This document shows positions 20,230-47,287 of a DNA stretch of 64,000 nucleotides, one piece after another (within the stretch, counting starts at the first letter, position 1; every line of letters begins with the position of its first letter). The DNA is from Haliotis cracherodii (taxonomy: Eukaryota). The position numbers and the translations under genes were made by a program. The notes under the pieces are model-generated. The model saw nothing but the letters and a program-made list of their open reading frames with translations. It was not told the origin of the DNA and did no database searches. The stretch is taken from positions 33,790,001 to 33,854,000 of the forward strand of contig NW_027266330.1 of NCBI RefSeq assembly GCF_022045235.1, given 5' to 3'.

Positions 20230-21197
20230 CTTGTGATGACACGCAAGATGGGACCATAGCAGGATATTGTGACAAGCAAGATGGGACCATAGCAGGATGT
20301 TGTGACAAGCAAGATGTTGTGACATGCAATATGAGACCGTAGCAGGATGTTGTAACACGCAAGATGAGACCGTAGCAGGATGTTGTGACAAGCAAGATAG
20401 GACCGTAGCAGGATGTTGTAACACGCAAGATGAGACCATAGCAGGATGTTGTAACACGCAAGATGAGACCGTAGCAGGATGTTGTGACCCGCAAGATGAG
20501 ACCATAGCAGGATGTTGTAACACGCAAGATGAGACCGTAGCTGGATGTTGTGACATGCAATATAGGACCGTAGCAGGATGTTGTAACACGCAAGATGAGA
20601 CCATAGCAGGATGTTTATGACATGCAAGATGAGACCATAGCAGGATGTTGTGACAAGCAAGATGAGACCGTAGCAGGATGTTGTGACACGCAAGATGGGA
20701 CCGTAGCAGGATGTTTATGACAAGCAAGATGAGACCGTAGCAGGATGTTCTGACACGCAAGATGGGACCGTAGCAGAATGTTGTGACATGCAAAATGAGA
20801 CCATAGCAGGATGTTGTGACACATAAGATAGGACCGTAGCAGAATGTTGTGACATGCAAGATGGGACCATAGCAGGATGTTTATGACATGCAAGATGAGA
20901 CCATAGCAGGATGTTGTGACAAGCAAGATGAGACCGTAGCAGGATGTTGTGACAAGCAAGATGAGACCATAGCAGGATGTTGTGACAAGCAAGATGAGAC
21001 CATAGCAGGATGTTTATGACTAGCAAAATGAGACCGTAGCAGGATGTTGTGACAAGCAAGATGAGACCGTAGCAGGATGTTGTGACACGCAAGATGGGAC
21101 CGTAGCTGGATGTTTATGACAAGCAAGATGAAACCGTAGCAGGATGTTGTGACAAGCAAGATGAGACCGTAGCAGGACGTTGTGACATGCAAGATGG
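20230..21197 (+). repeat. 33-bp intronic minisatellite (~29 copies, some 34-bp variants)
   Basis: Unit GCAAGATGAGACCGTAGCAGGATGTTGTGACAC. Confidence 0.95.
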
Positions 21198-21525
21198 AGA
21201 CGGCTGCTGCTGACTTGTGGTACATAAGTCACTACTATTATTTTTATCAAACTGACCTTGTCGAAAGCTACTATACTTTGATAATATCTAACTAGTGGAG
21301 GACATGGTTTCAAATGTATCGATACGGATCCCGTTAAGGTTAAAAAAGGAGTCCTCGCTTTGGACATAGGCGTCACATTAAATCCTGGGATTCAGTAAGT
21401 TTCACTTCCAATATTAGCTCTTAACAAGAGCGGCGATATCTGGTGTCTAATAAAAGATTGACAGGGCCTTTGATCTCGCCTCGATAAAGCAGTAATCGAA
21501 TAAGTATTTGATGCATATAACTCAC

Positions 21526-22601: not shown

Positions 22602-22876
22602 NNNNNNNNNNNNNNNNNNNNNNNNNNNNNNNNNNNNNNNNNNNNNNNNNNNNNNNNNNNNNNNNNNNNNNNNNNNNNNNNNNNNNNNNNNNNNNNNNNN
22701 NNNNNNNNNNNNNNNNNNNNNNNNNNNNNNNNNNNNNNNNNNNNNNNNNNNNNNNNNNNNNNNNNNNNNNNNNNNNNNNNNNNNNNNNNNNNNNNNNNNN
22801 NNNNNNNNNNNNNNNNNNNNNNNNNNNNNNNNNNNNNNNNNNNNNNNNNNNNNNNNNNNNNNNNNNNNNNNNNNNN
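22602..22876. other. Assembly gap (275 N)
   Basis: Run of N. Confidence 1.
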
Positions 22877-24551: not shown

Positions 24552-25500
24552 GACCACTAATACAGCTGATCAGTTCATGCGGGAAAACAGTATAGTCAGC
24601 TGGCCGCAAAGGATGACAGAAAAATTAGGAAACTATTGCAATGGAAGAGTAATTCAGTGGGCAATACTAGGAATTTGCTTGCATGAAATATATAACCCGC
24701 GGTCCAGGTGTATATTTTGTCGCCTCTTACGACTAGCAATGGGGTGCTGGGGACACATTCTACCCCGGGTCCACACGCGGCGTCTAATGTGTGAATGATA
24801 TAACCTCAGTTTAGTTGGGAGAAATGGGCACGGAGGGCCTTTACCCAGAATATGTCTCTTGGATAATAAAGATTCGACAAACATGCCTGAATAAAGTTTT
24901 ATAGACTAAAGTCGCTTGGACTGCGCAAGAAAATTCTAGACTTCCCGAAAATTCAGGTACATTTGTACTTCAGAGTATCTGGACTCACAACAATGAAACG
25001 CTACTTGACCAAACGAGTAATTTATGAAAAAGGTACTCGATGGTTGACTAGATAACCCCTAGAAAATTGTTTTTCAAGGATTACTAGAAAGAAGGGTATA
25101 AATAATAACACCATAGCCAATGCGTGTAGTCCAGTAACACCAGTGTAAGTCAGTACAAGATCAAGATTGCCCCATAGTTACTTACCTGCGAAACTAAGTT
25201 TCGACCTGACCACCTGACTCGAGATAACAAGCGGATGCCGAACACCTTCACACTGACACCAAGACCCTATAACCTGGCTGGAAATTGTACACAGAGCACA
25301 TGTTGAACGAAGGTCCAATTCCTTCCGATTGTCTTGAAGAAACGTGCCAAGTCTCCCAGTATTAAAGTCAACATTGATAGCATCATCGGGTGTGACCTGC
25401 CACCCCTACTGAGAGAAGCGCCCTACAATCCTAGTGAGTGACGTCACCCGGCTATTATCGACGCGGAAGTATAAATACTTTAAATGTTCACGCAGCAAGC

Positions 25501-25597
25501 GGGCGGGCTCCAGTCATGTGGTTACTTCGTTTACTGAAACACTCTTTCGATGGAATGGGTTCGTACCTTGTGCCACGGACGCCATCCAGCCTCTTTT
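25501..25597 (+). ncRNA. Vault RNA-like Pol III gene, copy 1
   Basis: GGGCGGGCTCCAGTCATGTGGTTACTTCG...GGGTTCGTACC (B box)...CCACGGACGCCATCCAGCC-TCTTTT; TATAAATA at 25470-25477; TGACGTCA at 25439-25446. The terminal stem has one mismatch (GGCGGG vs CCAGCC). Confidence 0.8.
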
Positions 25598-25778
25598 GTA
25601 ATTTTCTTTTTGAAAGTTTTTGCATAATAACATTTTCCAGGCAACCCACCTGTAATGGTGACGGGTGTTATTTACTTTCATGTCATGCATGGTTAATACT
25701 TAAATAACATGTGAAAGTGATTAAAACACTTTTTGTTAAAAACACCTGAGCAATGAATGTATATATAATTATATATAT

Positions 25779-26002
25779 ACAAATGTTATATTTGGGATAA
25801 CACTTTCTTAGTAAAGTACAAATTCTCGTATCTTTAGGGGGTTGAGTCCCGTGCGGGATTCGAACCCACACTTGCCAGAGTGAGGCACCTAATCGCCAGC
25901 ACACAAAGTCAGCGGTCTAGCCTACTCAGCCACCGAGGCTTAAAAAAAAGTACCAGAATCTGTACATTAATAAGAAAGTGTTATCCCAAATATAATATTT
26001 GT
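25779..26002. mobile_element. MITE-like element enclosing a tRNA-like A/B-box unit
   Basis: ~42-bp inverted ends ACAAATGTTATATTTGGGATAACACTTTCTTAGTAAAGTACA / TGTACATTAATAAGAAAGTGTTATCCCAAATATAATATTTGT; inside on the minus strand TGGCTGAGTAGG and GGGTTCGAATCCC. Confidence 0.75.
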
Positions 26003-26639
26003 TACATTTGACAACATTCAAATGGCATTGTGTATTCAATGAATGTATAAGTTAGTTAAATCTATGCAGAAGGATTCAAAAACATTCATAAAATAATCAC
26101 TAGAACCTAACGTTAAAATGATAGTACCTTTATTACACACAAAGTGTCTTTTCCTCTATTATTTCGAACAAAGACAATGCTCAAACAGAAGTAGTAACAG
26201 ATCTAATCACGTCAGTCTTGCATTAGCACATGTCACTCACTCCCCCACTCCCTTAACTTAAACTGATTCACCCAAAACTCACTCACCCATCCAATCTTCC
26301 TCAAGCCATACTCGCACAGCCACAACTCACTAACGCGACCATTCACTCGTCCACCTGCGCTAGAAGTAAAGGTGACCAGTCAGACATATTTAGATAATCA
26401 CTAGAACCTAACGTTAAAAGATACCTTTATAATACAAAGTGTCTTTTCCTCTATTATTTCGAACAAAGACATTGCTCAAACAGAAGTAGTAACAGATCTA
26501 AGGCGGGGTGTTGACTGTAATCACGTCAATGTCTTGCATTAGCACATGTCACTCACTCCCCCACTCCCTTAACTTAAACGTACTCACCCATCCAATCTTC
26601 CACAAGCCACACCCACAACTCACTGACGCGACCATTCAC

Positions 26640-26797
26640 ACACGCCCACAACTCACTCGTCCACTCGCCCACAACTCACTCGTCCACTCGCCCATCTATA
26701 ACTCACTCGTCCACTCGCCCACCCACAACTCACTCGTCCACACGCCCATCTATAACTCACTCGTCCACTCGCGCACCCACAACTCACTCGTCCACTC
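26640..26797 (+). repeat. Short tandem repeat (23-27 bp unit)
   Basis: AACTCACTCGTCCACTCGCC core, about 6 copies. Confidence 0.85.
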
Positions 26798-26969
26798 AGA
26801 GAAAGTCACGAGAAACAATATTGTTTTCATGTGGTCGTATATCGTGTGACAGTACACTCTTACTGTGAGGGGCGCCCGGCAATCGCGATGTCTGTCGTGG
26901 CTATTCTTGTAACGTACAAAGCGTTATCGACTGGAAGCTATAAATACCTTAAATGTCCACTCAATCAGT

Positions 26970-27073
26970 GGACTGGCGACAGTCATGTGGTTACTTCGTT
27001 TCAACATGAAAACTCTTTCTACCCAAGGGAAAGGGGTTCAAACCCCAGTACCACAGACGCTATCCAGTCTTTT
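26970..27073 (+). ncRNA. Vault RNA-like Pol III gene, copy 2
   Basis: GGACTGGCGACAGTCATGTGGTTACTTCG...GGTTCAAACCC...CCACAGACGCTATCCAGTC-TTTT; TATAAATA at 26939-26946; perfect GACTGG/CCAGTC terminal stem. Confidence 0.85.
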
Positions 27074-27524
27074 ACTATTTTTTAATTTTGTATGGTTTTA
27101 CAAAATACCGCTTTGGGCACTACATCTTGTTCTTCATATTAAATGTTTGGAAAGGCAATTGAGTGAATTACTCCTGAATTATAAACCGAAGTATGGCAGT
27201 AATAGGTGCATATATGAAATAGCACCCTGCTGTAGAATACTCATCCCCATGCACACCATGACATGTATGCTGGAAGCGCAAGCCTTCCAAATTTGAGACT
27301 AAGAGACTAAACTAAGTTTCGCCCTGACCACCTGACTCGAGATAACAAGCTAATGCCGAACCCCTTCACACTGACACCGATACCCTATAACCTGGCTGGA
27401 AATTGTACACAGAGCACATGTTTAACGAAGGTCCAATTCCTTCCGATTGTCTTGAAGAAACGTGCCAAGTCTCCCAGTGTTAAAGTCTACATTGATATCA
27501 TCATCGGGTGTGACCTGCCACCCC

Positions 27525-27610
27525 TACTGAGAGAAGCGCCCTACAATCCTAGTGGGTGACGTCAGTTCTTGCACCACACAGCTATTAACGACGCGGAAGT
27601 ATAAATACTT
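27525..27610 (+). promoter_or_regulatory. Upstream Pol III promoter of vault-like copy 3 (representative of all six copies)
   Basis: Distal block TACTGAGAGAAGCGCCCTACAATC, CRE TGACGTCA, TTCTTGCACCACACA at -65..-51 (PSE position), TTAACGAC, TATAAATA at -31. Homologous blocks precede the other copies. Confidence 0.7.
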
Positions 27611-27630
27611 CAAATGTTCACACAGCTAGC

Positions 27631-27732
27631 GGGCTGGCTCCAGTCATGTGGTTACTTCGTTTAATCAAACACTCTTTCAACACAAAGGATTGGGTTCGTC
27701 CCTTGTGCCACGGACGCCATCCAGCCTCTTTT
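27631..27732 (+). ncRNA. Vault RNA-like Pol III gene, copy 3
   Basis: GGGCTGGCTCCAGTCATGTGGTTACTTCG...GGGTTCGTCCC...CCACGGACGCCATCCAGCC-TCTTTT; TATAAATA at 27600-27607; TGACGTCA at 27557-27564. Confidence 0.87.
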
Positions 27733-28232
27733 ATATTTTCATTTTGAAAACTTTTGCATAATAACATTTTCCAGACAACCCACCTGTAATGGAGACGCGA
27801 TGTTATATAGTTTCATGTCATCGGTATCAGCATGTCCGTCACCACCTGTGCTCCCCTTCTTGCTGCTTTGTACAAGGTAATTTGACCAGGGCGTGTAACC
27901 TAAACGCCAGGCATATCGATAATCTGGTACCCTTCAATAACCATCAAATAGCCAATTCACCCACCTGCACTAGAAGTAAAGGTGACCAGTCAGACATATT
28001 TAGATAATCACTAGAACCTAACGTTAAAAGATACCTTTATTATACAAAGTGTCTTTTCCTCTATTAAGTCACGAGAAACAATATTGTTTTCATGTGGTCG
28101 TATATCGTGTGACAGTACACTCTTACTGTGAGGGGCGCCCGGCAATCGCGGTGTCTGTCGTGGCTATTCTTGTAACATATAAAGCGTTATCGACGGGAAG
28201 CTATAAATACCTTAAATGTCGACTCAATTTGC

Positions 28233-28342
28233 GGACTGGCAACAGTCATGTGGTTGCTTCGTTTCACCATGAAAACTCTTTCTACCCAACGGTAAGGTGT
28301 TCAAACCCCAGTACCACAGACGCTATCCAGTCTTCATTTTTT
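28233..28342 (+). ncRNA. Vault RNA-like Pol III gene, copy 4 (variant boxes, possibly weakened)
   Basis: GGACTGGCAACAGTCATGTGGTTGCTTCG...TGTTCAAACCC...CCACAGACGCTATCCAGTC-TTCATTTTTT; TATAAATA at 28202-28209; duplicate of copy 2. Confidence 0.75.
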
Positions 28343-28452
28343 ATTAATTTTCTATGGTTTTACAAAATACCGCTTTGGGCACTACATCTTGTTCTTCATA
28401 TTAAATATTTGGAAAGGCAATTGAGTGAATTACTCCTGAATTATAAACTGAA

Positions 28453-28617
28453 GTGAGTGAGTGAGTTTGGTTTTACGCCGCTTTTAGCAATATTCCTGCA
28501 ATGTCACGGCGGGGGACACCAGAAATGGGCTTCACACATTCTACCCATGTCGGGAATCGAACCCGGGTCTTCGGCGTGACGAGCGAACGCTTTAACCACT
28601 AGGCTACCCGACTGCCT
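28453..28617 (-). mobile_element. Family C tRNA-derived SINE, full length
   Basis: GGTAGCCTAGTGGTTAAAGCG A box, GGTTCGATTCCC B box, (TCAC)n tail; absent from the paralogous site near 27190; degenerate TAAAC.GAAGT duplication. Confidence 0.9.
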
Positions 28618-30618
28618 CTTAAAACAGAAGTATGGCAGTAATAGGAGAATATATGAAATAACACCCTGCTGTAGAATACGTATCCCCATACACACCATGA
28701 CATGTATGCTGGAAGCGCAAGCCTTCCAAGTTTGCTTCCAAAGCTAGTAATTAGACAAAGACAGAAAAATCATTGTATAAAGGTGTTAAGAACAATGATG
28801 CAGAATGTGTTCGCATCTTAGTTCTTTCAAATTATTAAACTTTAACTGAAAACAACAACGAAACAAATTTAATATTATAATCCCAAAATTAAAAAAAACA
28901 AACTGTTCTGTCAGAAACTTTCGTTTATGATAGCAGCTGTATGTGAAATCAACTTCAATTAAAACGTAAAAGTGCATATTCAGTACAAGTATTTAAAAAC
29001 AGAAACTAAATTACCTTGCTCTTCCCCGATAGGAAATAGGCAAGCAACTATTTTACATACAAGACTCAGACATGCATTCATTATTTTAGTGCTTTCAAAT
29101 ATAGAAAATCATATATGGAATTGTTTTACATTCTGATATTGTTTTACATTATTTTCTTCAATGTCCTAATTATATTAGTTCTCGTAGTTTCATTTTACAT
29201 GAGTTTTTTTAATCTGAGGGTAAAAATAATGTAAAAGCCCATGTTTGATGGAGACTAAAAAGAAAGAAACAAGAAATGGTTTATTGACGTTGATGTTGAT
29301 TATACGGGTATCATGGGTGTATTTTTTACCTTAAGTTTTTAGTGTTTCTGCGGCTGTTTGCAGCCTTGTAACATTTTGATAACGTTTGTAATTAACTCTT
29401 TGGCTAAATCCGGCTTTCAGGTATAATTTGTTTTCCCGGCAGGTTATATCTAGCATAGATTTAACTTTAATGCAATTCTATTTGACTCAAATGATAGTGT
29501 AAGTGAAATCCTTTTGGAAGCTGTGAACAATTTAGTCTCCAATTGTTTGTTGTAAAGAATACTGTTGTTTGCAAATATCAAATATTGATCAGATTGTACT
29601 TTTGAAAAGGAAACTATCAAGTATTTTCGTTGAACTCTTTCCTCGTTGTTCTTATTGTCTTCAGCCAATAAAATATTATTTGATTTGTGATATCATCATA
29701 TCTTGTTACTAAACACTGTGATGAACTGTGAATTAATTTTGATATTTCAAGTTGGTATTGCCGCTATCCAAACTGTGCAGTGGGGCCGTCTGATCGTAGA
29801 TAGTCATTTTTCAGACATAAATGAGAAGTTAATTAATGCGAGAAAAGACCACTCGCATTTTACGCTTTTAATACCCGCCCGCGTTAATTTCAAAACTTAC
29901 AGTTGTTGCAAGACTGAACATTGACAAGCAATAAGTTTATATTTTACACTCACATATTGAGAAAGAAAATATTTATGGAAATAATTCACTTCCGCAATTT
30001 GCTCCTGGTATGTATTTATTTAACCGTCTCACACATGAACTACCGAATGCGAAATCTGGTCCTCCTGAAGTGCTCTTTGAATATCCAACATCTTCAACAA
30101 GAGACCTCAACAATCACTTAAATGTATTCGGTTTTCCCAACTTTAATCTCAATTTTCCCAACTTTAATCTCAAACCTGTTTAAATGTTTTACTAACCATG
30201 TATCCTTCTGTGAATATACATGCCCGTATCAGAATTGTGTTTGTTTTGGTGCATGCCGGTGTCATACTTAATTAAAGACGTTTCGACATATCACCACTTA
30301 TTGCGACCGTCGTCGACCCATTCAAGTAAAAATCTTATAGTTTCCCCCTACCCCTAAACTGGCCCCTGTACACACTGATACATACACACTGCACACGCCC
30401 CCTTTTCTGTTGAAGAATATAATAAAATTTCAGAATTTTTACTAGTTTCTGTTTTCAATATGAATTTTAAAGAATAGCTCACACAATCCGAGATATGGTT
30501 TCTCCCACTACCCTGGTGTAGGCCGATGCAAACCTTTGTAAAATAGTTTATAACTTTTAGTGACAATGTTTCAATTTGTTCTTGCATCTTTTATTTTCTT
30601 CTCTATGACTGTTTCGCG

Positions 30619-30894
30619 GGGACACCGGTGGCCCTGTCGTCTAAGGCGCCGCGATATTCGCTGTGCAGAGTTGCGTCCCTTGGGCACGCCAGAAACCTAT
30701 GATTGTGGGTTCGAATCCCGGTTCGCCCCGATTATGTTTCTAGGTTTGTCAGCACCGTGCTCGTGGGTTTCACCGAAGTGGTAAACGTCCGAGACCTGCA
30801 TCACTTCGGGCTTTCCTCCCACATTAAGCTGACACGCCGTGTTATAACTGGAACACTGTTAAAAGCGGCGTTAAACCCAACTCACTCACTCACT
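30619..30894 (+). mobile_element. Family A SINE, full length
   Basis: Head-to-tail match; ACTGTTT[C/T]GC on both flanks. Confidence 0.9.
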
Positions 30895-31637
30895 GTTTTG
30901 CTGTTTAGATGTTACTGTAATAACGCGGCTAATGCTCCAAGCTAGTCCATCCCATACCATGCATACCGGGTGGCACCTACATATGTATATACAAAAAAAT
31001 GATTCTAGCATTTATCATTCCCAAGCATGTTAAAATCAAATTTACCTTGACGGATTTGTTATCTACTAAAGGAACATATCTTCCTCCCTTCCCAGTCAGT
31101 TTAGGAAAGAAGTCATGAGGATATAAAGGTGTCCAATTAAGAATTGATTAAGGTACACACTTGACACTGAGTGAGATTTCTCAGTTCGCTATACACGTGA
31201 TGTAGATGTGCTCGTCGGTGATCAAATAACAGTTCGCTGTATCCGTTAGTTCGTTGTAGAGAGTTCGTTATATACGTAAATTTTATATGATATTATATAG
31301 GAGATAAATCGGGGATTTTTTAACAGTTCGTTGTATCCGTTTGCTGCTATATCCGTGTTCGTTATATCCGCGTTCTACTGTATTAACGTTCAAACCGGTG
31401 TGCACACTGTGTAAATCCTCAAAGAAACATATTTGAGTAATTAATAAATAAAAATAATAACTTCACAGGCTGCTTATTTAATAACAAAAAGTGTAGACAA
31501 TCGATCAGTTGTTGACATAGCTCAAAACTGTCATCTCAAGCCCCGCCCACCCTATTATCATCCAATCAGGAAACAGTAGACCCCCTCTGAGAACATACCA
31601 TGCTAGCACTGGCAGTATATAATTGCATGTGAATGTA

Positions 31638-31892
31638 ACTCGTGAAGATCCAGGGTAGAATAGGTCTTCAGCAACCCATGCTTGTTGGAAAAGGCGACTC
31701 TGCTTGTCGTACGTGGCGACTAACGGATCGGGTGGTCAGGCTCGCTGACTTGGTTGATGCATGTCATCGTGTCCCAATTGCGTGGATCGATGCTCATAAT
31801 GTCTATCTCTGGATTGTCTGGTCCATACTCGATTATGTACAGACCGCAGCTGGAGTATTGCTGAGAGTGGCGTTAAACAACAAACAAACAAA
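31638..31892 (+). mobile_element. Family B retroposon
   Basis: CTCGTGAAGATCCAGGGTAGAATAGGTCTTCAGCAACCCATGC head, (AAAC)n tail; ends just upstream of the copy 5 promoter. Confidence 0.85.
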
Positions 31893-32012
31893 GAATGTGA
31901 ACGTCCAGGCATACCGAGTGAAGCGCCCTACAATCATGATGACTACTCTTGCACCACACACTGTGTTTATCGACCGCAGGCTATAAATACTTTTAGTGAC
32001 CATTCAGTCAGC

Positions 32013-32131
32013 GGGCTGGCTACAGCGGTGTGGTTACTTCGCTAAAAATAATAAAACTGAAAAAGCTCTGACGCAAAGAACGGCGTTCGAGCCCCAGTAC
32101 TATATGCGCGATCCAGTCTATCAACTTTTTT
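32013..32131 (+). ncRNA. Vault RNA-like Pol III gene, copy 5 (divergent central loop)
   Basis: GGGCTGGCTACAGCGGTGTGGTTACTTCG...CGTTCGAGCCC...GCGCGATCCAGTC-TATCAAC-TTTTTT; TATAAATA at 31982-31989. Confidence 0.8.
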
Positions 32132-32214
32132 GTTTAATTCTTTTTTTTTTAATTTACATATATACGAGATATAAACGATTTTTTCTTTCAACAGTGTTTG
32201 TAAGTTGCGTAAAC

Positions 32215-34490
32215 ACTCTCCGTATATTGTCTCCCCTCTACCCGCTGTGTCTATAGTCTCCCTTCTATCCGCTGTGTCTATAGTCTCCCTTCTATCCGCT
32301 GTGTCTATAGTCTCCCTTCTATCCGCTGTGTATATAGTCTCCCCACTATCCGATATATCTATAGTCTCCCCTCTATCCGATGTGTCTATAGTCTCCCCAC
32401 TATCCGATATACATGTATCTATAGTCTCCCCTCTATCCGCTGTGTCTATAGTCTCCCCACTATCCGATATATCTATAGTCTCCCCTCTATCCTCTCTATT
32501 TATAGTCTCCCCACTATCCGATATATCTAAAGTCTCCCCTCTATCCGCTGTGTCTATAGTCTCCTCACTATCCGCTGTGTATATCGTCTCCCCTCTATCC
32601 GCTGTGTGTAAAATCTCCCCTCTATCTGCTGTGTCTATAGTCTCCCGTCTATCCGCTGTGTCTATAGTCTCCCTTCTATCCGCTGTATCTATAGTACCCC
32701 CTCTATTCGCTGTGTCTATAGTCTCCCCACTATCCGATATATCTATAGTCTCCCCTCTATCCGCTGTGTCTATAGTCTCCCCACTATCCCACATATCTAT
32801 AGTCTCCCCTCTATCCGCTGTGTCTATAGTCTCCCCACTATCCGATATATCTATAGTCTCCCCACTATCCGATATATCTATAGTCTCCCCTCTATCCTCT
32901 GTGTCTATAGTCTCCCCACTATCCGATATATCTATAGTCTCCCCACTATCCGCTGTGTATATCGTCTCCCCTCTATCCGATGTGTGTAAAATCTCCCCTC
33001 TATCCGCTGTGTCTGTAGTCTCCCCACTATCCTCTGTGTCTATAGTCTCCCTTCTATCCGCTGTGTATATAGTCACGCCTCTATCCGCTGTGTATACAGT
33101 CTCCCCTCTATCTACTGTGTCTATAGTCTCCCCTCTATCTACTGTGTCTATAGTCTCCCCTCTATCCGCTGTGTCTATAGTCTCCCTTCTATCCGCTGTG
33201 TATATAGTCTCCCCTCTATCCGCTGTGTATACAGTCTCCCCTCTATCCGCTGTGTCTATAGTCTCCCCACTATCCGTTGTGTCTATAGTCTCCCTATCCG
33301 CTGTGTCTATAGTCTCCCCTCTATCCGCTGTGTATAAAGTCTCCCCTCTATCCGCTGTGTCTATAGTCTCCCCACTATCCGTTGTGTCTATAGTCTCCCT
33401 ATCTGCTTTGCATATCGTCCTCCCTCTATCCGCTGTGTTTATAGTCTCCCCTCTATCCTCTGTGTCTATAGTCTCCCCACTATCCGCTGTGTATATAGTC
33501 GTCTTCCCTCTATCCGCTGTGTATATAATCTCTCCTCTATCCACTGTGTCTATAGTCTCCCTATCCGCTGTGTCTATAGTCTCCTCTCTACCCGTTTTGT
33601 CTATAGTCTCCCCTCTATCCGCTGTGTCTATAGTCTCCCCACTATGCGCTACGTATATAAGCTCCCCTCTATCCACTGTGGATATAATCTCTCCTCTATC
33701 CCCTGTGTATATAGTCTCCCCTCTATCCCCCGTACATATAATCTCTCCTCTGTCCACTGTGTATATAATCTCCCCTCTATCCCCCGTATATATAATGTCT
33801 GCTCTGTCCACTGTCTATATAGTATCCCCTATATGCGCTGTGTATATAATCTCCCCTCTATCCACCGTGTATATAATCTCCCCTCTATCCACTGTGTATA
33901 TAATCTCTCCTCTATCCACTGTGTATATAATCTCCCCTCTATCCACTGTGTATATAATCTCTCCTCTATCCACTGTGCATATAGTCTCTCCTCTATCCAC
34001 TGTGTATATAGTCCTCCCTCTATCCGTTGTGAATATATTCTCCCCTCTATCCGCTGTGTATATAGTCCTCCCTCTATCAACTGTGTATATAGTCTCCCCT
34101 CTATCCGCTGTGTATATAGTCCTCCCTCTATCAGCTGTGTATATAGTCCTCCCTCTACCCGCTGTGTATATAGTCTCCACTCTACCCGCTGTGTATATAG
34201 TCTCCCCTCTATCTGCTGTGTATATAGACCTCCCTCTATCTGCTGTGTATATAGTCTCCCCTCTATCCGCTGTGTATATAGTACTCCCTCTACCCGCTGT
34301 GTATATAGTCTCCACTCTACCCGCTGTGTATATAGTCTCGCCTCTACCCGCAGTGTATATAGTCTCCCCTCTATCTGCTGTGTATATAGTCCTCCCTCTA
34401 CTCGCTGTGTATATAGTCCTCCCTCTACCCGCTGTGTATATAATCTCCCCTCTATCCGCTGTGTATATAATCTCCCCTCTATCTGCTGTG
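32215..34490 (+). repeat. 27-bp minisatellite (~84 copies)
   Basis: Unit TCTCCCCTCTATCCGCTGTGTCTATAG; explains the 780-, 589-, 290- and 231-aa overlapping ORFs. Confidence 0.95.
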
Positions 34491-34900
34491 TTTCGACACC
34501 TGCGCAACAATTGTGAAATAAGCCGGTTTCTTCAAGATGGGCGGTGAGAATGGGGGTGAGTGAGTTTGGTTTTACGCCGCTTTTAGCAATATTCCAGCAA
34601 TATCACGGCTACCCCACCGCCCCGTGACAAATGTACACTTAAGTGGTGTAAGTGGTCTTAGAGTTAAGACCGAGAGAAAAGATGTGCTTTGTTGACTGCA
34701 TGTCCGAAATTAAAAACAAATGTGCTCTAAGCCTTTCCCCCAAAATACGTACACGACAGTTTGACTGCCCCATGCTTTGACAGTACCCCGTACTGAGTGA
34801 AGCGTCCTACAATCCCTATGACTCATAAGCCTATTTTTACACCATGCATTGCTTTATCGACGCTGACACTATACATACTACAAATGTCCCGGCGACAGAC

Positions 34901-35008
34901 GGGCTGGCCACAGCTATGTGGTTACTTCGTTTCATTTGAGAAAACTCTTTCTGCATAGGAGAAGGGGGTTCGGTCCCCTGTACCACAGGCGCGATCCAGC
35001 CTTTTTTT
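34901..35008 (+). ncRNA. Vault RNA-like Pol III gene, copy 6
   Basis: GGGCTGGCCACAGCTATGTGGTTACTTCG...GGTTCGGTCCC...CCACAGGCGCGATCCAGCC-TTTTTTT; TATA variant TATACATA at 34870-34877; TGACTCA at 34819-34825. Confidence 0.87.
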
Positions 35009-35904
35009 AAATCTTTCTATTTTGATGATTTTATACATGACCATTTTTGACAGGTGGTTTTTATGCGGGCGTGAACAACGAGGATGGATCATTAGTAATT
35101 GCAACCCTTCTCGAGGGGCATAAGGTTTGATGTTACCTGTGTGTGAGCCCCTGTGCCCCCAGCCGTCACTACCTGGACTCACACACAGGGTACATCACAT
35201 CACAGGGAACAGTTGACAACGATTATACCTTTCCGACATTCATTCATAGAAGCCCGGAATATGTACCTGGAGTTTAACTCTGCAAAACTCGAAGCACACG
35301 ACGCAAAGAAGAACTTTGCTTTACACAATGTAATCAATCGGTTCGTTCCAAATGATCGATAATTATTCGAGTCATGCACGATATGCTCCGATTGATTTCT
35401 TCGTGGGCTACATGAGCCGACTAGATTGAAAATAATTGCCCGCTCCTTAATCAATCAAGAGCTTGTATTTTTATGTAAGGTGAGATATTTCGTCTTATCA
35501 ACGTGGGAAGTCATACCTGGTACTGTATACCGTTGGGTTTTTTTTCGTCTCGGGGATATCAGGTCAGCGTCGATAGTGTGGCTGGATTTGAAGTCGGTTT
35601 TGACCAATCCTTTAATGCTGTATGTTTCTATATGATCATGAGACACCGTGAATGATTGCTAAAATATATGCTTTGAATAATTGGTTGTTCATTTCTTTAA
35701 ATATACAATATGCATATTTCAACCTGTTATAGGTACTTTGAGCCATATGCTGCTGATATGTGAATGTAGAATAAATCCTGTTTGAATGTTTGAGTTTTAA
35801 TTACAGTATATGTTTGTAGTTAATTGAAACGCTGACTAACGGGAGAGGTATATGTAACCATAGAGTGTGGTTTACTCACACTATATGGTGTGCAATGGTT
35901 GTTC

Positions 35905-37070
35905 AGGTTGTATGGGTGTGGTGGATTACCTCCGGTGTAAGGGTGTGGTGGATTACCTCGGGTGTATGGGTGTAGTGGATTACCTCCTGTGTATGGGTAT
36001 GGTGGATCTCCTCGGGTGTATGGGTATGGTGGGTGACCTCGGGTGTATGGGTGTGGTGGATTACCTCGGGTGTATGGGTGTGGTGGATTACCTCGGGTGT
36101 ATGGGTGTGGTGGATTACCTCGGGTATACGGGTGTGGTGACCTCGGGTGTATGGGTGTGATAGAACACTTCGGGTGTATGGGTGTGATAGAACACTTCGG
36201 GTGTATGGGTGTGATAGAACACTTCGGGTGTATGGGTGTGATAGAACACTTCGGGTGTATGGGTGTGATAGAACACTTCGGGTGTATGGGTGTGATAGAA
36301 CACTTCGGGTGTATGGGTGTGATAGAACACTTCGGGTGTATGAGTGTGATAGAACACTTCGGGTGTATGGGTTTGATAGAACACTTCGTGTGTATGGGTG
36401 TGATAGAACACTTCGAGTGTATGGGTGTGATAGAACACTTCGGGTGTATGGGTGTGATAGAACACTTCGGGTGTATGGGTGTGATAGAACACTTCGGGTG
36501 TATGGGTGTGATAGAACACTTCGGGTGTATGGGTTTGATAGAACACTTCGTGTGTATGGGTGTGATAGAACACTTCGGGTGTATGGGTGTGATAGAACAC
36601 TTCGTGTGTATGGGTGTGATAGAACACTTGGTGTGTATGGGTGTGATAGAACACTTCGGGTGTATGGGTTTGATAGTACACTTCGTGTGTATGGGTGTGA
36701 TAGAACACTTCGGGTGTATGGGTGTGATAGAACACTTCGGGTGTATGGGTGTGATAGAACACTTCGGGTGTATGGGTGTGATAGAACACTTCGGGTGTAT
36801 GGGTGTGATAGAACACTTCGTGTGTATGGGTGTGATAGAACACTTCGGGTGTATGGGTGTGATAGAAAACTTCGGGTGTATGGGTGTGATAGAACACTTC
36901 GGGTGTATGGGTGTGATAGAACACTTCGGGTGTATGGGGCAAATGAATCACCTCGGGTGTATGGATGTAGTGCATCACCTCGGGTGCACGAGCGTAGATG
37001 TATCACTTCGGGTGTATGGGAGTACGTGGACCACTTGGGGTGTATGGGTGTGATAGATCACTTCAGGTGT
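35905..37070 (+). repeat. Second 27-bp minisatellite (~43 copies)
   Basis: Unit GGGTGTATGGGTGTGATAGAACACTTC; homogeneous core with diverged edges. Confidence 0.95.
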
Positions 37071-45365: not shown

Positions 45366-46177
45366 ATCATTGATTAAGGACAATTATATATAGACGCAAT
45401 AATCGTGAGGGTGACGACGTTAAACCCCATTTCACCTCACCTCACGTGAAATGTGGAACAATTTAACGATTTTGCACAATATATTTTATAACGACGTGTC
45501 AGGGCTACTTCTTGTCCCATCCTCAACAACAATAACGAAACTGTTATCCAGAAATATATATATATACTTTTATTCCTCCATAGGAGAGTTACAAGGTATA
45601 ATATTAAAGATAATTACAAGAAAATAATTACATTGTCAGAGAATACCACCATATACCACTGTGGTAACGGATTTTCTTAGTAAATTCCGTCCATAAGCGG
45701 TAGAGTCCTCGAATTACACTTCGTGAGTAAGAGCGACTGGTATCTGGATCAGTATCTAATTTAAAGGTGGCTTACAGGACTACAAACAAGCTACACGATC
45801 ATAGTCTGATTTGCCGTGGAGTTCAACGCTGATGTCACACACACAATGTCACACCATAAGTTCTCTCTTATTTTTCCCATACTCACACAGTGGCACAGTA
45901 CGTGAGTCAGTAAGTCATGGTAGTTAATACCACAATGTGTACAGGGACCATGTAATTTCCCCGGTCTCCACATCGCACACATGGGAAAAAAAACAGGCAG
46001 CTGCCTTTACCTCAGGACATTCTCTAGCTATCCTCCACGCCACGTGTGGAGTCACATCTCTCAAACTGCACAGTGTCAGGGTCTGATGAAAGTCTTTCCC
46101 GACATTTTCCTGGCAGCATTGGCTCCTTCAGGCGCCCCAGAAATCTCTAATAATGGATTAATTACTTTGTGTTTCAG

Positions 46178-47287
46178 AATGGACGTCTCATGTGGGTCTT
46201 CCTGGGATGTGTGACCCTTTGTATTATTGTTACATGCGCCATGCAAGTGAAGATGTATGTGTTTAGCATCGTGAACATGGGAGAAACTGGCGGAATGAGA
46301 ACATCATCATCCAGAATCAGTGATAAGAACATGCATGGAAGACCAGATCAAAAGGAGACAGTCAAGGATAAGTACATCGTCTACACCTGTAACACAGGAC
46401 GTTGTGGCGGGCTGGCGGACAGACAGAAGGGCATTGTCACAGCCTTTGTGTTGTCGCAGATGTTAGGACGGCTGTTTGGCATTAGTATGTTCAAGCCGTG
46501 TGACATCTCAGAGTTCGTCATCCCTAAGGACGTGGATTGGACACTTGATAGTAGAACATTAGCACATTTGAAAAAGGAATGGTTTGTTGATATGGATGGT
46601 AATGGCATGGGTGTTGCTATGGCTACAGGAGATCTGGAAGCAATGTTTCAGAACGACGGTACTATGTACACTGGAAATATAGATTTGGTTCCTTATCTCA
46701 TGAAAAATCCGTTGTTTCACAAAGTCTCTTGGGCTCGGAAATTAAGTCATCTTGATATTTATAAATACGCATTTGAAAAACTATTCAAACTTTCGCATAA
46801 AACACAAGATAAATTTGATGAAATAATAGGAACAATTGATTCAAATCACCAAAAGCTGGTGTGTGCCCATATACGAATGGGAAAAAGCCGGACAATCCCC
46901 AGAGATAATAGTCGAAAGGCTCACCGGCCTGATCCGGAAAGTCTGATCCGTTTTTTCAAAACGAGGCTACATCCGGGTTCTGATAAGCTGTTCATTGCAA
47001 CAGATTCACAGCAGGTCAGGATTCGGTTTAAAAAAGCATTTCCTGACTCCTATCTAGAAGCAAAAGGGCAGATTGTTCACATAGATCGCCCATCAGGGAC
47101 GTTTGAGTGTTCGGCGATGGAGAAGGTTGTCCTGGACCAGTATGTTTTGTCAGAATGCGACACTTTGGTGATGTCTGTTAGTGGTTTCAGTCGACTTGCT
47201 GCAATAATGAGAGGGCGAGACGAAGATCTGTTTTTAGCCAGGGGAAAGAACGTTTCAGAGAGTCCCAGGCTTTCTCCAACACTATGA
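46178..47287 (+). CDS. Type II Golgi glycosyltransferase, alpha-2/alpha-6/O-fucosyltransferase superfamily (GT-B)
   Basis: Acceptor TTTCAG| at 46177, in-frame Met at 46190, TM anchor, CGGLADRQKG, motif I CAHIRMG, motif II LFIATDS, motif III DQYVLSECD..SVSGFSRLAA; uninterrupted ~370-aa frame. Confidence 0.85.
   Translation, partial: NGRLMWVFLGCVTLCIIVTCAMQVKMYVFSIVNMGETGGMRTSSSRISDKNMHGRPDQKETVKDKYIVYTCNTGRCGGLADRQKGIVTAFVLSQMLGRLFGISMFKPCDISEFVIPKDVDWTLDSRTLAHLKKEWFVDMDGNGMGVAMATGDLEAMFQNDGTMYTGNIDLVPYLMKNPLFHKVSWARKLSHLDIYKYAFEKLFKLSHKTQDKFDEIIGTIDSNHQKLVCAHIRMGKSRTIPRDNSRKAHRPDPESLIRFFKTRLHPGSDKLFIATDSQQVRIRFKKAFPDSYLEAKGQIVHIDRPSGTFECSAMEKVVLDQYVLSECDTLVMSVSGFSRLAAIMRGRDEDLFLARGKNVSESPRLSPTL

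What the first reader, a model, noticed from the sequence alone, without database searches (positions are those of the whole stretch)
25400..35010. Cluster of six vault RNA-like Pol III genes in a probable mollusc genome
Seen: six co-oriented ~97-119 nt units starting at 25501, 26970, 27631, 28233, 32013 and 34901. They share a 5' GG[G/A]CTGGC, GTGGTTACTTCG, a variable centre, a GTTCR B box, a 3' CGC.ATCCAG[C/T]C and an oligo-T, with no internal T4 run and a TATA box about 31 nt upstream. Established: vertebrate vault RNAs begin GGCUGGC, contain GGUUACUUCG after the A box, carry an internal B box, end GCGCUCUCCAGUCCUUUU, occur in small clusters and use mixed internal plus upstream Pol III promoters. 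Inference: this is the organism's vault RNA locus. Vault RNAs are best described in deuterostomes and I know of no characterised gastropod cluster, though I cannot check the literature. The units lack the tails and target duplications of the SINEs in this window, and flank similarity among the divergent copies is confined to promoter blocks.
Basis: partly seen in the sequence, partly recalled or inferred. Interest (0 to 1): 0.92.

Follow-up and report, generated by a model that had tools for sequence, protein, structure and literature searches.

The report
Vault RNA gene cluster in abalone

Summary
All six units match Rfam Vault (RF00006) end to end, at 40.2-54.9 bits against a cut-off of 34. 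No other family matches them at E<=1.

Each unit has:
- a TATA box at exactly -31;
- internal A and B boxes;
- a first T4+ run only after the conserved 3' end;
- a panhandle fold.

Across 18 paralogues the panhandle is 86.5% paired, against 28-45% in slid controls, and 5 pairs show compensatory changes.

This is not a SINE. The 1.18-Gb genome holds about 28 such loci in a few clusters, 20 of them on the window's chromosome. The copies also share about 100 bp of untranscribed upstream promoter.

The genome encodes MVP and a TEP1-like gene.

Assembly size points to Haliotis cracherodii.

Novelty is low. Vault RNAs were predicted in lophotrochozoans in 2009, and Rfam already holds those of the gastropod Lottia gigantea.

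The scan noted this same stretch twice before (s1-834500, s1-834560).

Verdict: a new member of a known kind.

The parts
25391..25500 (+). Upstream promoter of unit 1. It has TATA at -31, the TTAWCGAC block at -46 and a palindromic CRE-like octamer at -62. A deletion of about 12 bp relative to unit 3 removes the -65 block.
25501..25597 (+). Vault RNA gene 1 (type A, 97 nt). Position 5 is G, which breaks one pair of the terminal stem. This copy is possibly weakened.
   Evidence: RF00006 41.0 bits; its fold z-score is 0.08, so it is no more stable than shuffled sequence
26860..26969 (+). Upstream promoter of unit 2, with TATA at -31 and conserved blocks at -46, -65 and -98.
26970..27073 (+). Vault RNA gene 2 (type B, 104 nt). 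The terminal stem carries a compensatory G-C to A-U change.
   Evidence: RF00006 49.0 bits; fold z-score -3.66; pair counts
27521..27630 (+). Upstream promoter of unit 3, with TATA at -31, blocks at -46, -64 and -95, and the CRE-like octamer at -74.
27631..27732 (+). Vault RNA gene 3 (type A', 102 nt).
   Evidence: RF00006 47.6 bits; panhandle minimum-energy fold
28123..28232 (+). Upstream promoter of unit 4, with TATA at -31 and blocks at -46, -65 and -98.
28233..28342 (+). Vault RNA gene 4 (type B', 110 nt). It has a base change after box A and one in box B, and its terminator is displaced by 4 nt.
   Evidence: RF00006 40.2 bits
31903..32012 (+). Upstream promoter of unit 5, with TATA at -31 and blocks at -46, -66 and -90.
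32013..32131 (+). Vault RNA gene 5 (119 nt). It is the most divergent copy, and its terminator lies 7 nt beyond the conserved 3' end.
   Evidence: RF00006 42.7 bits
34791..34900 (+). Upstream promoter of unit 6, with a TATA variant at -31, blocks at -47, -66 and -99, and an AP-1-like heptamer at -82.
34901..35008 (+). Vault RNA gene 6 (108 nt). It is the best match to the family and ends in a T7 terminator.
   Evidence: RF00006 54.9 bits. A 96% identical copy lies about 363 kb away on the opposite strand
25191..27295 (.). First copy of a tandem segmental duplication. It carries genes 1 and 2.
   Evidence: Self-BLAST: 25191-25686 matches 27309-27821 at 90%; 26803-27192 matches 28066-28454 at 94%; 27179-27295 matches 28619-28734 at 92%
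27309..28734 (.). Second copy of the tandem segmental duplication. It carries genes 3 and 4 and is interrupted by a tRNA-like SINE at about 28457-28618.

Best explanation
These are six paralogous vault RNA (vtRNA) genes, each an independent RNA polymerase III transcription unit of about 100-120 nt.

Shown from sequence:
- Every unit has internal A and B boxes about 45-50 nt apart and an oligo-T terminator just after the conserved 3' end.
- Every unit has an upstream module of about 100 bp, with a TATA box at -31 and three or four further conserved blocks.

Inferred: transcription uses a mixed internal-plus-external promoter, as reported for the rat vtRNA gene.

Shown by folding and covariation: the RNA forms the family's panhandle. 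The 5' and 3' ends pair, a second helix closes a variable central domain, and that domain differs between paralogues.

Shown from flank homology: the cluster grew by local duplication, and an A+B gene pair was duplicated in tandem.

Inferred only: the RNAs bind a TEP1-like protein inside MVP vault particles, with a free cytoplasmic pool as in mammals. The genome encodes both proteins.
For: - Family match: RF00006 matches all six units full length, above the gathering score. It is the only family hit at E<=1 with permissive filters.
- Fold: all six minimum-energy folds pair the two ends.
- Covariation: on 18 paralogues the two panhandle helices are 88.5% and 97.2% paired. Five pairs carry double changes. 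Slid controls give 28-45%.
- Fixed signals: TATA at -31 in 6 of 6, a conserved block at -46/-47 in 6 of 6, and no T4 run before the 3' end.
- Constraint: between old paralogues only the span from -110 to the gene end is similar (promoter 57-75%, gene 72-80%). Flanks are at background, 35-52%.
- Copy number: about 28 loci in the genome.
- Vault proteins: MVP repeat and shoulder exons lie at C3:5.046-5.056 Mb, with a second locus on C80. TROVE exons followed by a DUF4062 exon, the TEP1 domain order, lie at C80:51.63-51.646 Mb.
- Precedent for the promoter type: the rat vtRNA gene needs both internal and upstream elements (PMC10218354).
Against: - There is no expression evidence.
- Vault association cannot be tested by computation.
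- The third helix of the Rfam consensus is poorly kept here: 65% paired and no covariation.
- Some copies look impaired. Unit 25501 has a broken stem pair, a promoter deletion and a fold z-score of 0.08. Unit 28233 has base changes after box A and in box B.
- The TEP1 N-terminal repeat family (PF05386) was not found in the genome.
Confidence: 0.85

Rival explanations
1. The units are copies of a SINE or another retroposed Pol III element derived from a tRNA or a vault RNA. On this reading they are not functional genes.
For: The window does hold tRNA-derived SINE pieces at 25844-25939 and 28542-28613. Vault units of another cluster also score as tRNA above the Rfam cut-off.
Against: Only about 28 loci exist in 1.18 Gb, grouped in a few clusters. 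The copies share about 100 bp of upstream, untranscribed sequence with TATA fixed at -31, and retroposition cannot carry that. The 3' ends carry oligo-T terminators, not A-rich tails. Compensatory stem changes are present.
Confidence: 0.03
2. The units are true homologues of vault RNA genes, but the RNAs work mainly or only outside vault particles, or several of the six are decaying pseudogenes. The locus would then not be a vault-particle RNA locus in the functional sense.
For: A preprint abstract states that at least 95% of human vtRNA is not vault-associated (PMC13404743, listed). Units 25501 and 28233 carry damaging-looking changes. Three copies at 13.1-13.8 Mb have broken terminal stems, and two of them lack a T4 run.
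Against: MVP and a TEP1-like gene are present. Promoter and gene are kept at 92-96% in pairs whose flanks have decayed to 36-72%, which argues for ongoing constraint or gene conversion on most copies.
Confidence: 0.1
3. The units belong to a different, undescribed Pol III RNA family. They would hit the Vault model only because they share A/B boxes and a terminal stem.
For: Vault RNAs are poorly conserved, and much of the model's signal lies in the boxes and stems. The model's third helix is not kept here.
Against: The matches are full length, 6-21 bits above the cut-off. They include the family-specific block after box A and the conserved 3' end, not just the boxes. That same block after box A was used as the signature of the Lottia and Helobdella vtRNAs held in Rfam. 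No other family matches.
Confidence: 0.02

Closest known systems
Vertebrate vault RNAs (human VTRNA1-1/1-2/1-3 and VTRNA2-1; rat vtRNA), Rfam RF00006
   Same: The length is about 100 nt. Both have the same 5' start motif, A and B boxes, the block after box A, the conserved 3' end with an oligo-T, and a panhandle fold. Both form small tandem clusters. Both combine a TATA-bearing upstream region with internal promoter elements.
   Different: Abalone has many more loci, about 28 against 4 in human, spread over several clusters. Inside this window the cluster is flanked by minisatellites and SINE pieces, and the only protein-like ORF is a weak fucosyltransferase-like one at 46169-47287, about 11 kb downstream. 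No jaz zinc-finger hit, which would mark a ZMAT2-like gene, lies nearer than about 9.6 Mb on the same chromosome. The vertebrate linkage to ZMAT2 and the protocadherin cluster is my recollection of Stadler et al. 2009. The upstream blocks are unrelated to the abalone U6 promoter. The central helix of the Rfam consensus is not kept.
Predicted lophotrochozoan vault RNAs in Rfam: Lottia gigantea (gastropod) and Helobdella robusta (annelid). Source: Mosig, Zhu and Stadler 2009, as cited in PMC2770079.
   Same: They come from the same phylum, or superphylum, and share the block after box A that PMC8824774 used as a search seed. Like the present units, they are known only from homology prediction.
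   Different: I could not fetch those sequences, so no direct alignment was made. No cluster architecture, promoter description or copy-number census for a mollusc turned up in the open literature I searched.
Fasciola hepatica vtRNAs (PMC8824774)
   Same: They are lophotrochozoan vtRNAs found through box A and its flanking block. They have a panhandle fold and several paralogues.
   Different: The Fasciola RNAs have expression support and are enriched in extracellular vesicles. The abalone units have no expression data here.
tRNA-derived SINEs
   Same: They also have internal A and B boxes and Pol III terminators, and they occur in this same window.
   Different: SINEs are dispersed in high copy number, lack shared upstream promoters and carry tails. 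The vault units do none of these.

Membership tests
Vault RNA (Rfam RF00006) | Full-length match to the family covariance model at or above the gathering score (34 bits) | tested here: met
   All six units score 40.2-54.9 bits over model positions 1-99 of 99. It is the only family matching at E<=1.
Vault RNA (Rfam RF00006) | Panhandle secondary structure: 5' and 3' ends paired, plus a second helix | tested here: met
   Helix 1 is 88.5% paired and helix 2 is 97.2% paired on 18 paralogues. Five pairs show compensatory change. Slid controls give 28-45%. All six minimum-energy folds show it.
Vault RNA (Rfam RF00006) | Inner helix of the Rfam consensus, between the block after box A and box B | tested here: not met
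   It is only 65% paired, one position never pairs, and there are no double changes. This helix is a detail of the consensus rather than a defining trait of the family, so I do not treat it as excluding membership.
Vault RNA (Rfam RF00006) | Pol III gene anatomy: internal A and B boxes, an oligo-T terminator, no internal T4 run, length 80-150 nt | tested here: met
   Box A starts at +11 and box B at +57 to +70. The first T4+ run lies 0-7 nt after the conserved 3' end. Lengths are 97-119 nt.
Vault RNA (Rfam RF00006) | Upstream (external) promoter elements in addition to the internal ones, as in rat vtRNA | tested here: met
   TATA is at -31 in 6 of 6 units. Conserved blocks lie at -46, about -65 and -83 to -99. 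Their function was not tested. The rat precedent is in PMC10218354.
Vault RNA (Rfam RF00006) | Low copy number in small clusters, not a dispersed repeat | tested here: met
   The Rfam search found 15 hits, a DNA search 9, and the species-specific model 28. All fall in a few clusters. These counts are lower bounds, because only the best candidates are scored.
Vault RNA (Rfam RF00006) | The genome encodes the vault proteins MVP and TEP1 | tested here: met
   MVP repeat and shoulder exons lie on C3 and C80. TROVE and DUF4062 exons lie in TEP1 order on C80. The TEP1_N repeat was not found.
Vault RNA (Rfam RF00006) | Expressed as a stable RNA of about 100 nt | not tested
Vault RNA (Rfam RF00006) | Physical association with vault particles, or binding to TEP1 | not testable with these tools
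   This needs vault purification or MVP/TEP1 immunoprecipitation.
tRNA-derived SINE | High copy number, dispersed, no shared upstream sequence, 3' tail and target-site duplications | tested here: not met
   There are about 28 clustered loci. The copies share a 100-bp promoter. They end in oligo-T terminators. Target-site duplications were not searched for systematically.

The most novel reading that the evidence does not exclude
Abalone carries an unusually large vault RNA family: about 20 strong and 8 divergent loci in roughly seven clusters, 20 of the loci on one chromosome. Its genes are driven by a family-specific upstream module of about 100 bp, with TATA at -31 and CRE/AP-1-like and other conserved blocks. 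That module is unrelated to the U6 promoter of the same genome. This would imply regulated, paralogue-specific Pol III expression. With expression and vault-binding data, it would be the first characterised protostome vault RNA locus.
Probability: 0.35. Interest if true: 0.4.

Novelty: new member of a known kind. Interest (0 to 1): 0.25.

Why it matters
Vault RNAs have been studied experimentally almost only in vertebrates. Outside deuterostomes they are mostly database predictions. A well-resolved mollusc locus, with six paralogues, defined promoters and visible covariation, gives ready probes for asking two questions. Do protostome vaults carry RNA? What is the upstream promoter code of invertebrate mixed-type Pol III genes? 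For genome annotation the result is ordinary: a standard Rfam scan finds these genes.

Tried and rejected

2. Shared snRNA-type PSE. I aligned the -110 to -32 regions of abalone U6 genes to the vault promoters. Scores of 10-16 equal the shuffle means of 12-13. Four vault-to-vault pairs scored 19-42, and three of the four beat every shuffle. No common PSE was detected.

3. Vertebrate-like synteny with ZMAT2. The nearest zf-C2H2_jaz hit on this chromosome is at 24.23 Mb, about 9.6 Mb from the cluster. This gives no support for synteny, and the test is weak.

4. TEP1 N-terminal repeat (PF05386). No hit in the genome. TEP1 is instead supported by TROVE plus DUF4062. The two strongest TROVE hits turned out to be intronless Ro60 genes, not TEP1.

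5. Protein-coding neighbours. ORFs in the window gave no solid Pfam hits. The long ORFs at 32-37 kb are minisatellite artefacts.

6. Stadler et al. 2009 (Mol Biol Evol) is not held in the library. What I say about it rests on citing papers and on my own memory.

7. RNAalifold alone predicted only 3 pairs of the terminal stem, because degenerate copies break it. The full stem was scored explicitly.
Full report
OBSERVATION. A gathering-threshold scan of the whole window against Rfam 15 returned six full-length matches to Vault (RF00006, model positions 1-99 of 99):

| Unit (window coordinates) | Bits |
|---|---|
| 34901-35006 | 54.9 |
| 26970-27074 | 49.0 |
| 27631-27731 | 47.6 |
| 32013-32123 | 42.7 |
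| 25501-25596 | 41.0 |
| 28233-28337 | 40.2 |

The family cut-off is 34 bits, and E-values run from 1.4e-9 to 2e-5. A permissive re-scan of 25300-35200 at E<=1 found no other family on these units. In particular there was no Y RNA or tRNA hit. A species-specific covariance model found exactly these six in the window and no more.

ANATOMY. A script over the six units shows the following.
- The TATA box starts at exactly -31 in all six. Five carry one identical 9-mer and unit 34901 a one-base variant.
- An 8-nt block lies at -46 or -47 in all six.
- A 9-nt block lies at -64 to -66 in five. It is missing from unit 25501 through a deletion of about 12 bp relative to its sister, unit 27631.
- A 13-nt block lies at -83 to -99 in all six.
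- Units 25501 and 27631 also carry a palindromic CRE-like octamer. Unit 34901 carries an AP-1-like heptamer at the equivalent place.
- Inside the genes, box A starts at +11 and box B at +57 to +70.
- The first run of four or more T always follows the conserved 3' end, by 0-7 nt. There is therefore no internal terminator.
- Predicted RNAs are 97, 104, 102, 110, 119 and 108 nt long.

Unit 25501 has G for T at position 5. Unit 28233 has G for A after box A.

STRUCTURE. Each of the six sequences folds with its two ends paired and a second helix closing the central domain. Fold z-scores against shuffles range from -3.97 to 0.08. Unit 25501 is no more stable than shuffled sequence.

I aligned 18 paralogues from this genome (alignment A1) and scored a named structure on them. 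Overall, 86.5% of cells are paired, against 28-45% when the 3' partners are slid by 1-3 columns.

| Helix | Paired |
|---|---|
| Terminal helix | 88.5% |
| Second helix | 97.2% |
| Third helix of the Rfam consensus | 65% |

Five pairs change on both sides while keeping the pair, for example C-G/U-A/U-G at columns 14 and 98. None of 500 shuffles reached the observed covariation score. The third Rfam helix shows no double changes, so I do not claim it here.

The paralogues are related to each other and the structure was partly derived from them. The shuffle control therefore overstates significance. The slid control is the fairer one, and it is also clear.

NOT A SINE.
- RF00006 on the whole 1.18-Gb assembly gave 15 hits above the cut-off, all on the window's contig C67.
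- A DNA search with unit 34901 gave 9 hits from 9 candidates.
- My model R1, built from the 18 copies, recovered those 18 at 78-117 bits. It added 10 weaker loci at 34-50 bits: two more on C67, two on C4, and six in a cluster on C5 in which three successive spacings are about 2.3-2.4 kb.
- The weaker loci I re-scanned score 26.5-34.6 bits on the Rfam model. Some lack TATA or box B.
- The family therefore has about 28 loci in roughly seven clusters. The tools score only the best candidates, so these are lower bounds, but nothing points to hundreds of copies.
- Most decisive, the copies share untranscribed upstream sequence, which retroposition cannot copy.

DUPLICATION HISTORY AND CONSTRAINT. 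Self-BLAST of 24-36 kb shows a tandem segmental duplication.

| First copy | Second copy | Identity |
|---|---|---|
| 25191-25686 | 27309-27821 | 90% |
| 26803-27192 | 28066-28454 | 94% |
| 27179-27295 | 28619-28734 | 92% |

A tRNA-like SINE is inserted in the second copy. Genes 1+2 and genes 3+4 are thus a duplicated A+B pair.

For older pairs, segment-wise identities show similarity only from about -110 to the gene end. For units 27631 and 34901 the values are:

| Segment | Identity |
|---|---|
| Distal upstream | 39% |
| Promoter | 68% |
| Gene | 76% |
| Downstream | 49% and 39% |

Unit 34901 and its copy at C67:34188036, about 363 kb away on the opposite strand, are 95% identical in the promoter and 96% in the gene. 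Their distal flanks are 49% and 36% identical, and the first 100 bp downstream 62%. Either purifying selection or gene conversion acts on exactly the promoter-plus-gene block. In both cases that block is the functional unit.

PROMOTER TYPE. Abalone U6 genes also have a TATA box, at -30. They form a tandem array of more than 40 copies on C34. Their -110 to -32 region shows no similarity to the vault promoters beyond shuffles. The vault upstream blocks are therefore family-specific, not a generic snRNA-type PSE. The rat vtRNA gene is reported to need both internal and upstream elements (PMC10218354). The abalone layout is consistent with that, but its function was not tested.

VAULT PROTEINS.
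- MVP repeat exons (PF01505) and MVP shoulder exons (PF11978) lie in order at C3:5.046-5.056 Mb. A second locus lies at C80:34.86-34.88 Mb.
- TROVE exons at C80:51641049-51645893 on the - strand are followed downstream by a DUF4062 exon. This is the domain order I recall for human TEP1.
- The strongest TROVE hits are two intronless Ro60 genes.
- The TEP1_N repeat was not found.

ORGANISM. The assembly has 1,182,234,246 bases in 80 contigs. The published primary assembly of Haliotis cracherodii has 1,182,252,637 bp in 81 scaffolds (PMC9709981). Earlier notes of this scan also call the genome black abalone. I take it as a vetigastropod mollusc, most probably that species. I did not verify this by sequence comparison.

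WHAT IS KNOWN.
- A 2022 Fasciola paper took box A plus its flanking block from the Lottia gigantea and Helobdella robusta vtRNAs held in Rfam as its search seed. It also compared its vtRNAs with that mollusc sequence (PMC8824774).
- Full-text searches pairing 'vault RNA' with mollusc, snail, oyster, Lottia, Crassostrea or Aplysia found no experimental study of a mollusc vault RNA. They also found no description of a mollusc cluster.

The kind is therefore known and already predicted in a gastropod. What is added here is one more species, a cluster map, a copy census and a promoter description.

LIMITS.
- No orthologues from other molluscs could be fetched.
- Vault binding cannot be tested by computation.
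- The run of N at 22602-22876 was left alone.

The same stretch carries two sister notes in this scan, s1-834500 on covariation and s1-834560 on promoter grammar. My own tests agree with the first and partly with the second.

Noticed in passing
window 32222-34491; also 35909-37070, 20308-21201 and 26645-26797: Large minisatellites fill the spaces around the vault genes: 27 bp x 84 copies, 27 bp x 43, 33 bp x 27 and 27 bp x 6. They create spurious long ORFs of up to 780 aa on both strands.
   Followed up: partly
window 25844-25939 (-) and 28542-28613 (-): These are tRNA-like SINE pieces. ARAGORN calls the first tRNA-Thr-like, and it sits between inverted repeats at 25779-25835 and 25947-26002. 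The second reaches the Rfam tRNA cut-off at 31 bits and interrupts the second copy of the segmental duplication.
   Followed up: no
G000:C67:46.430-46.438 Mb (loci L011-L015, L063): This is another vault RNA cluster of six units, three of them spaced 977 bp apart. Its subfamily starts with A instead of G. One of its units also scores as tRNA above the Rfam cut-off (35.2 bits at L063:341-413), and a second scores just below it at 28.6 bits. These units could be mis-annotated as tRNA pseudogenes.
   Followed up: partly
G000:C5:27.950-27.965 Mb (L064-L069) and C4:36.914-36.922 Mb (L062, L070): These are divergent vault-like units scoring 40-50 bits on my model. The three re-scanned against Rfam (L062, L064, L065) score 30-31 bits, below its cut-off. 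The C5 group holds six units, three successive spacings being about 2.3-2.4 kb, and lacks TATA and a clear box B. The C4 unit in L070 is 151 nt long, has TATA at -31 and shows compensatory changes in the terminal stem.
   Followed up: partly
G000:C34:17.60-17.68 Mb: More than 40 near-identical U6 snRNA genes form a tandem array with a period of about 1487 bp.
   Followed up: no
G000:C80:49525578-49537931 (L038, L039): Two TROVE-domain ORFs on opposite strands, about 10 kb apart, are each an uninterrupted open frame of about 550 aa. The one scanned against Pfam (L038, 548 aa) is Ro60 (TROVE plus the Ro60 vWA domain). No Y RNA was looked for.
   Followed up: no
window 46169-47287 (+): A 372-aa ORF gives weak hits to NodZ and glycosyltransferase family 11, which makes it fucosyltransferase-like. 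Both hits are below the Pfam cut-offs.
   Followed up: no
G000:C67:34188036 and 34191188 (-): About 363-366 kb from the window cluster there is an inverted partial copy holding a gene-1-like and a gene-6-like unit in the same relative order. The gene-6-like unit is 96% identical to gene 6.
   Followed up: partly
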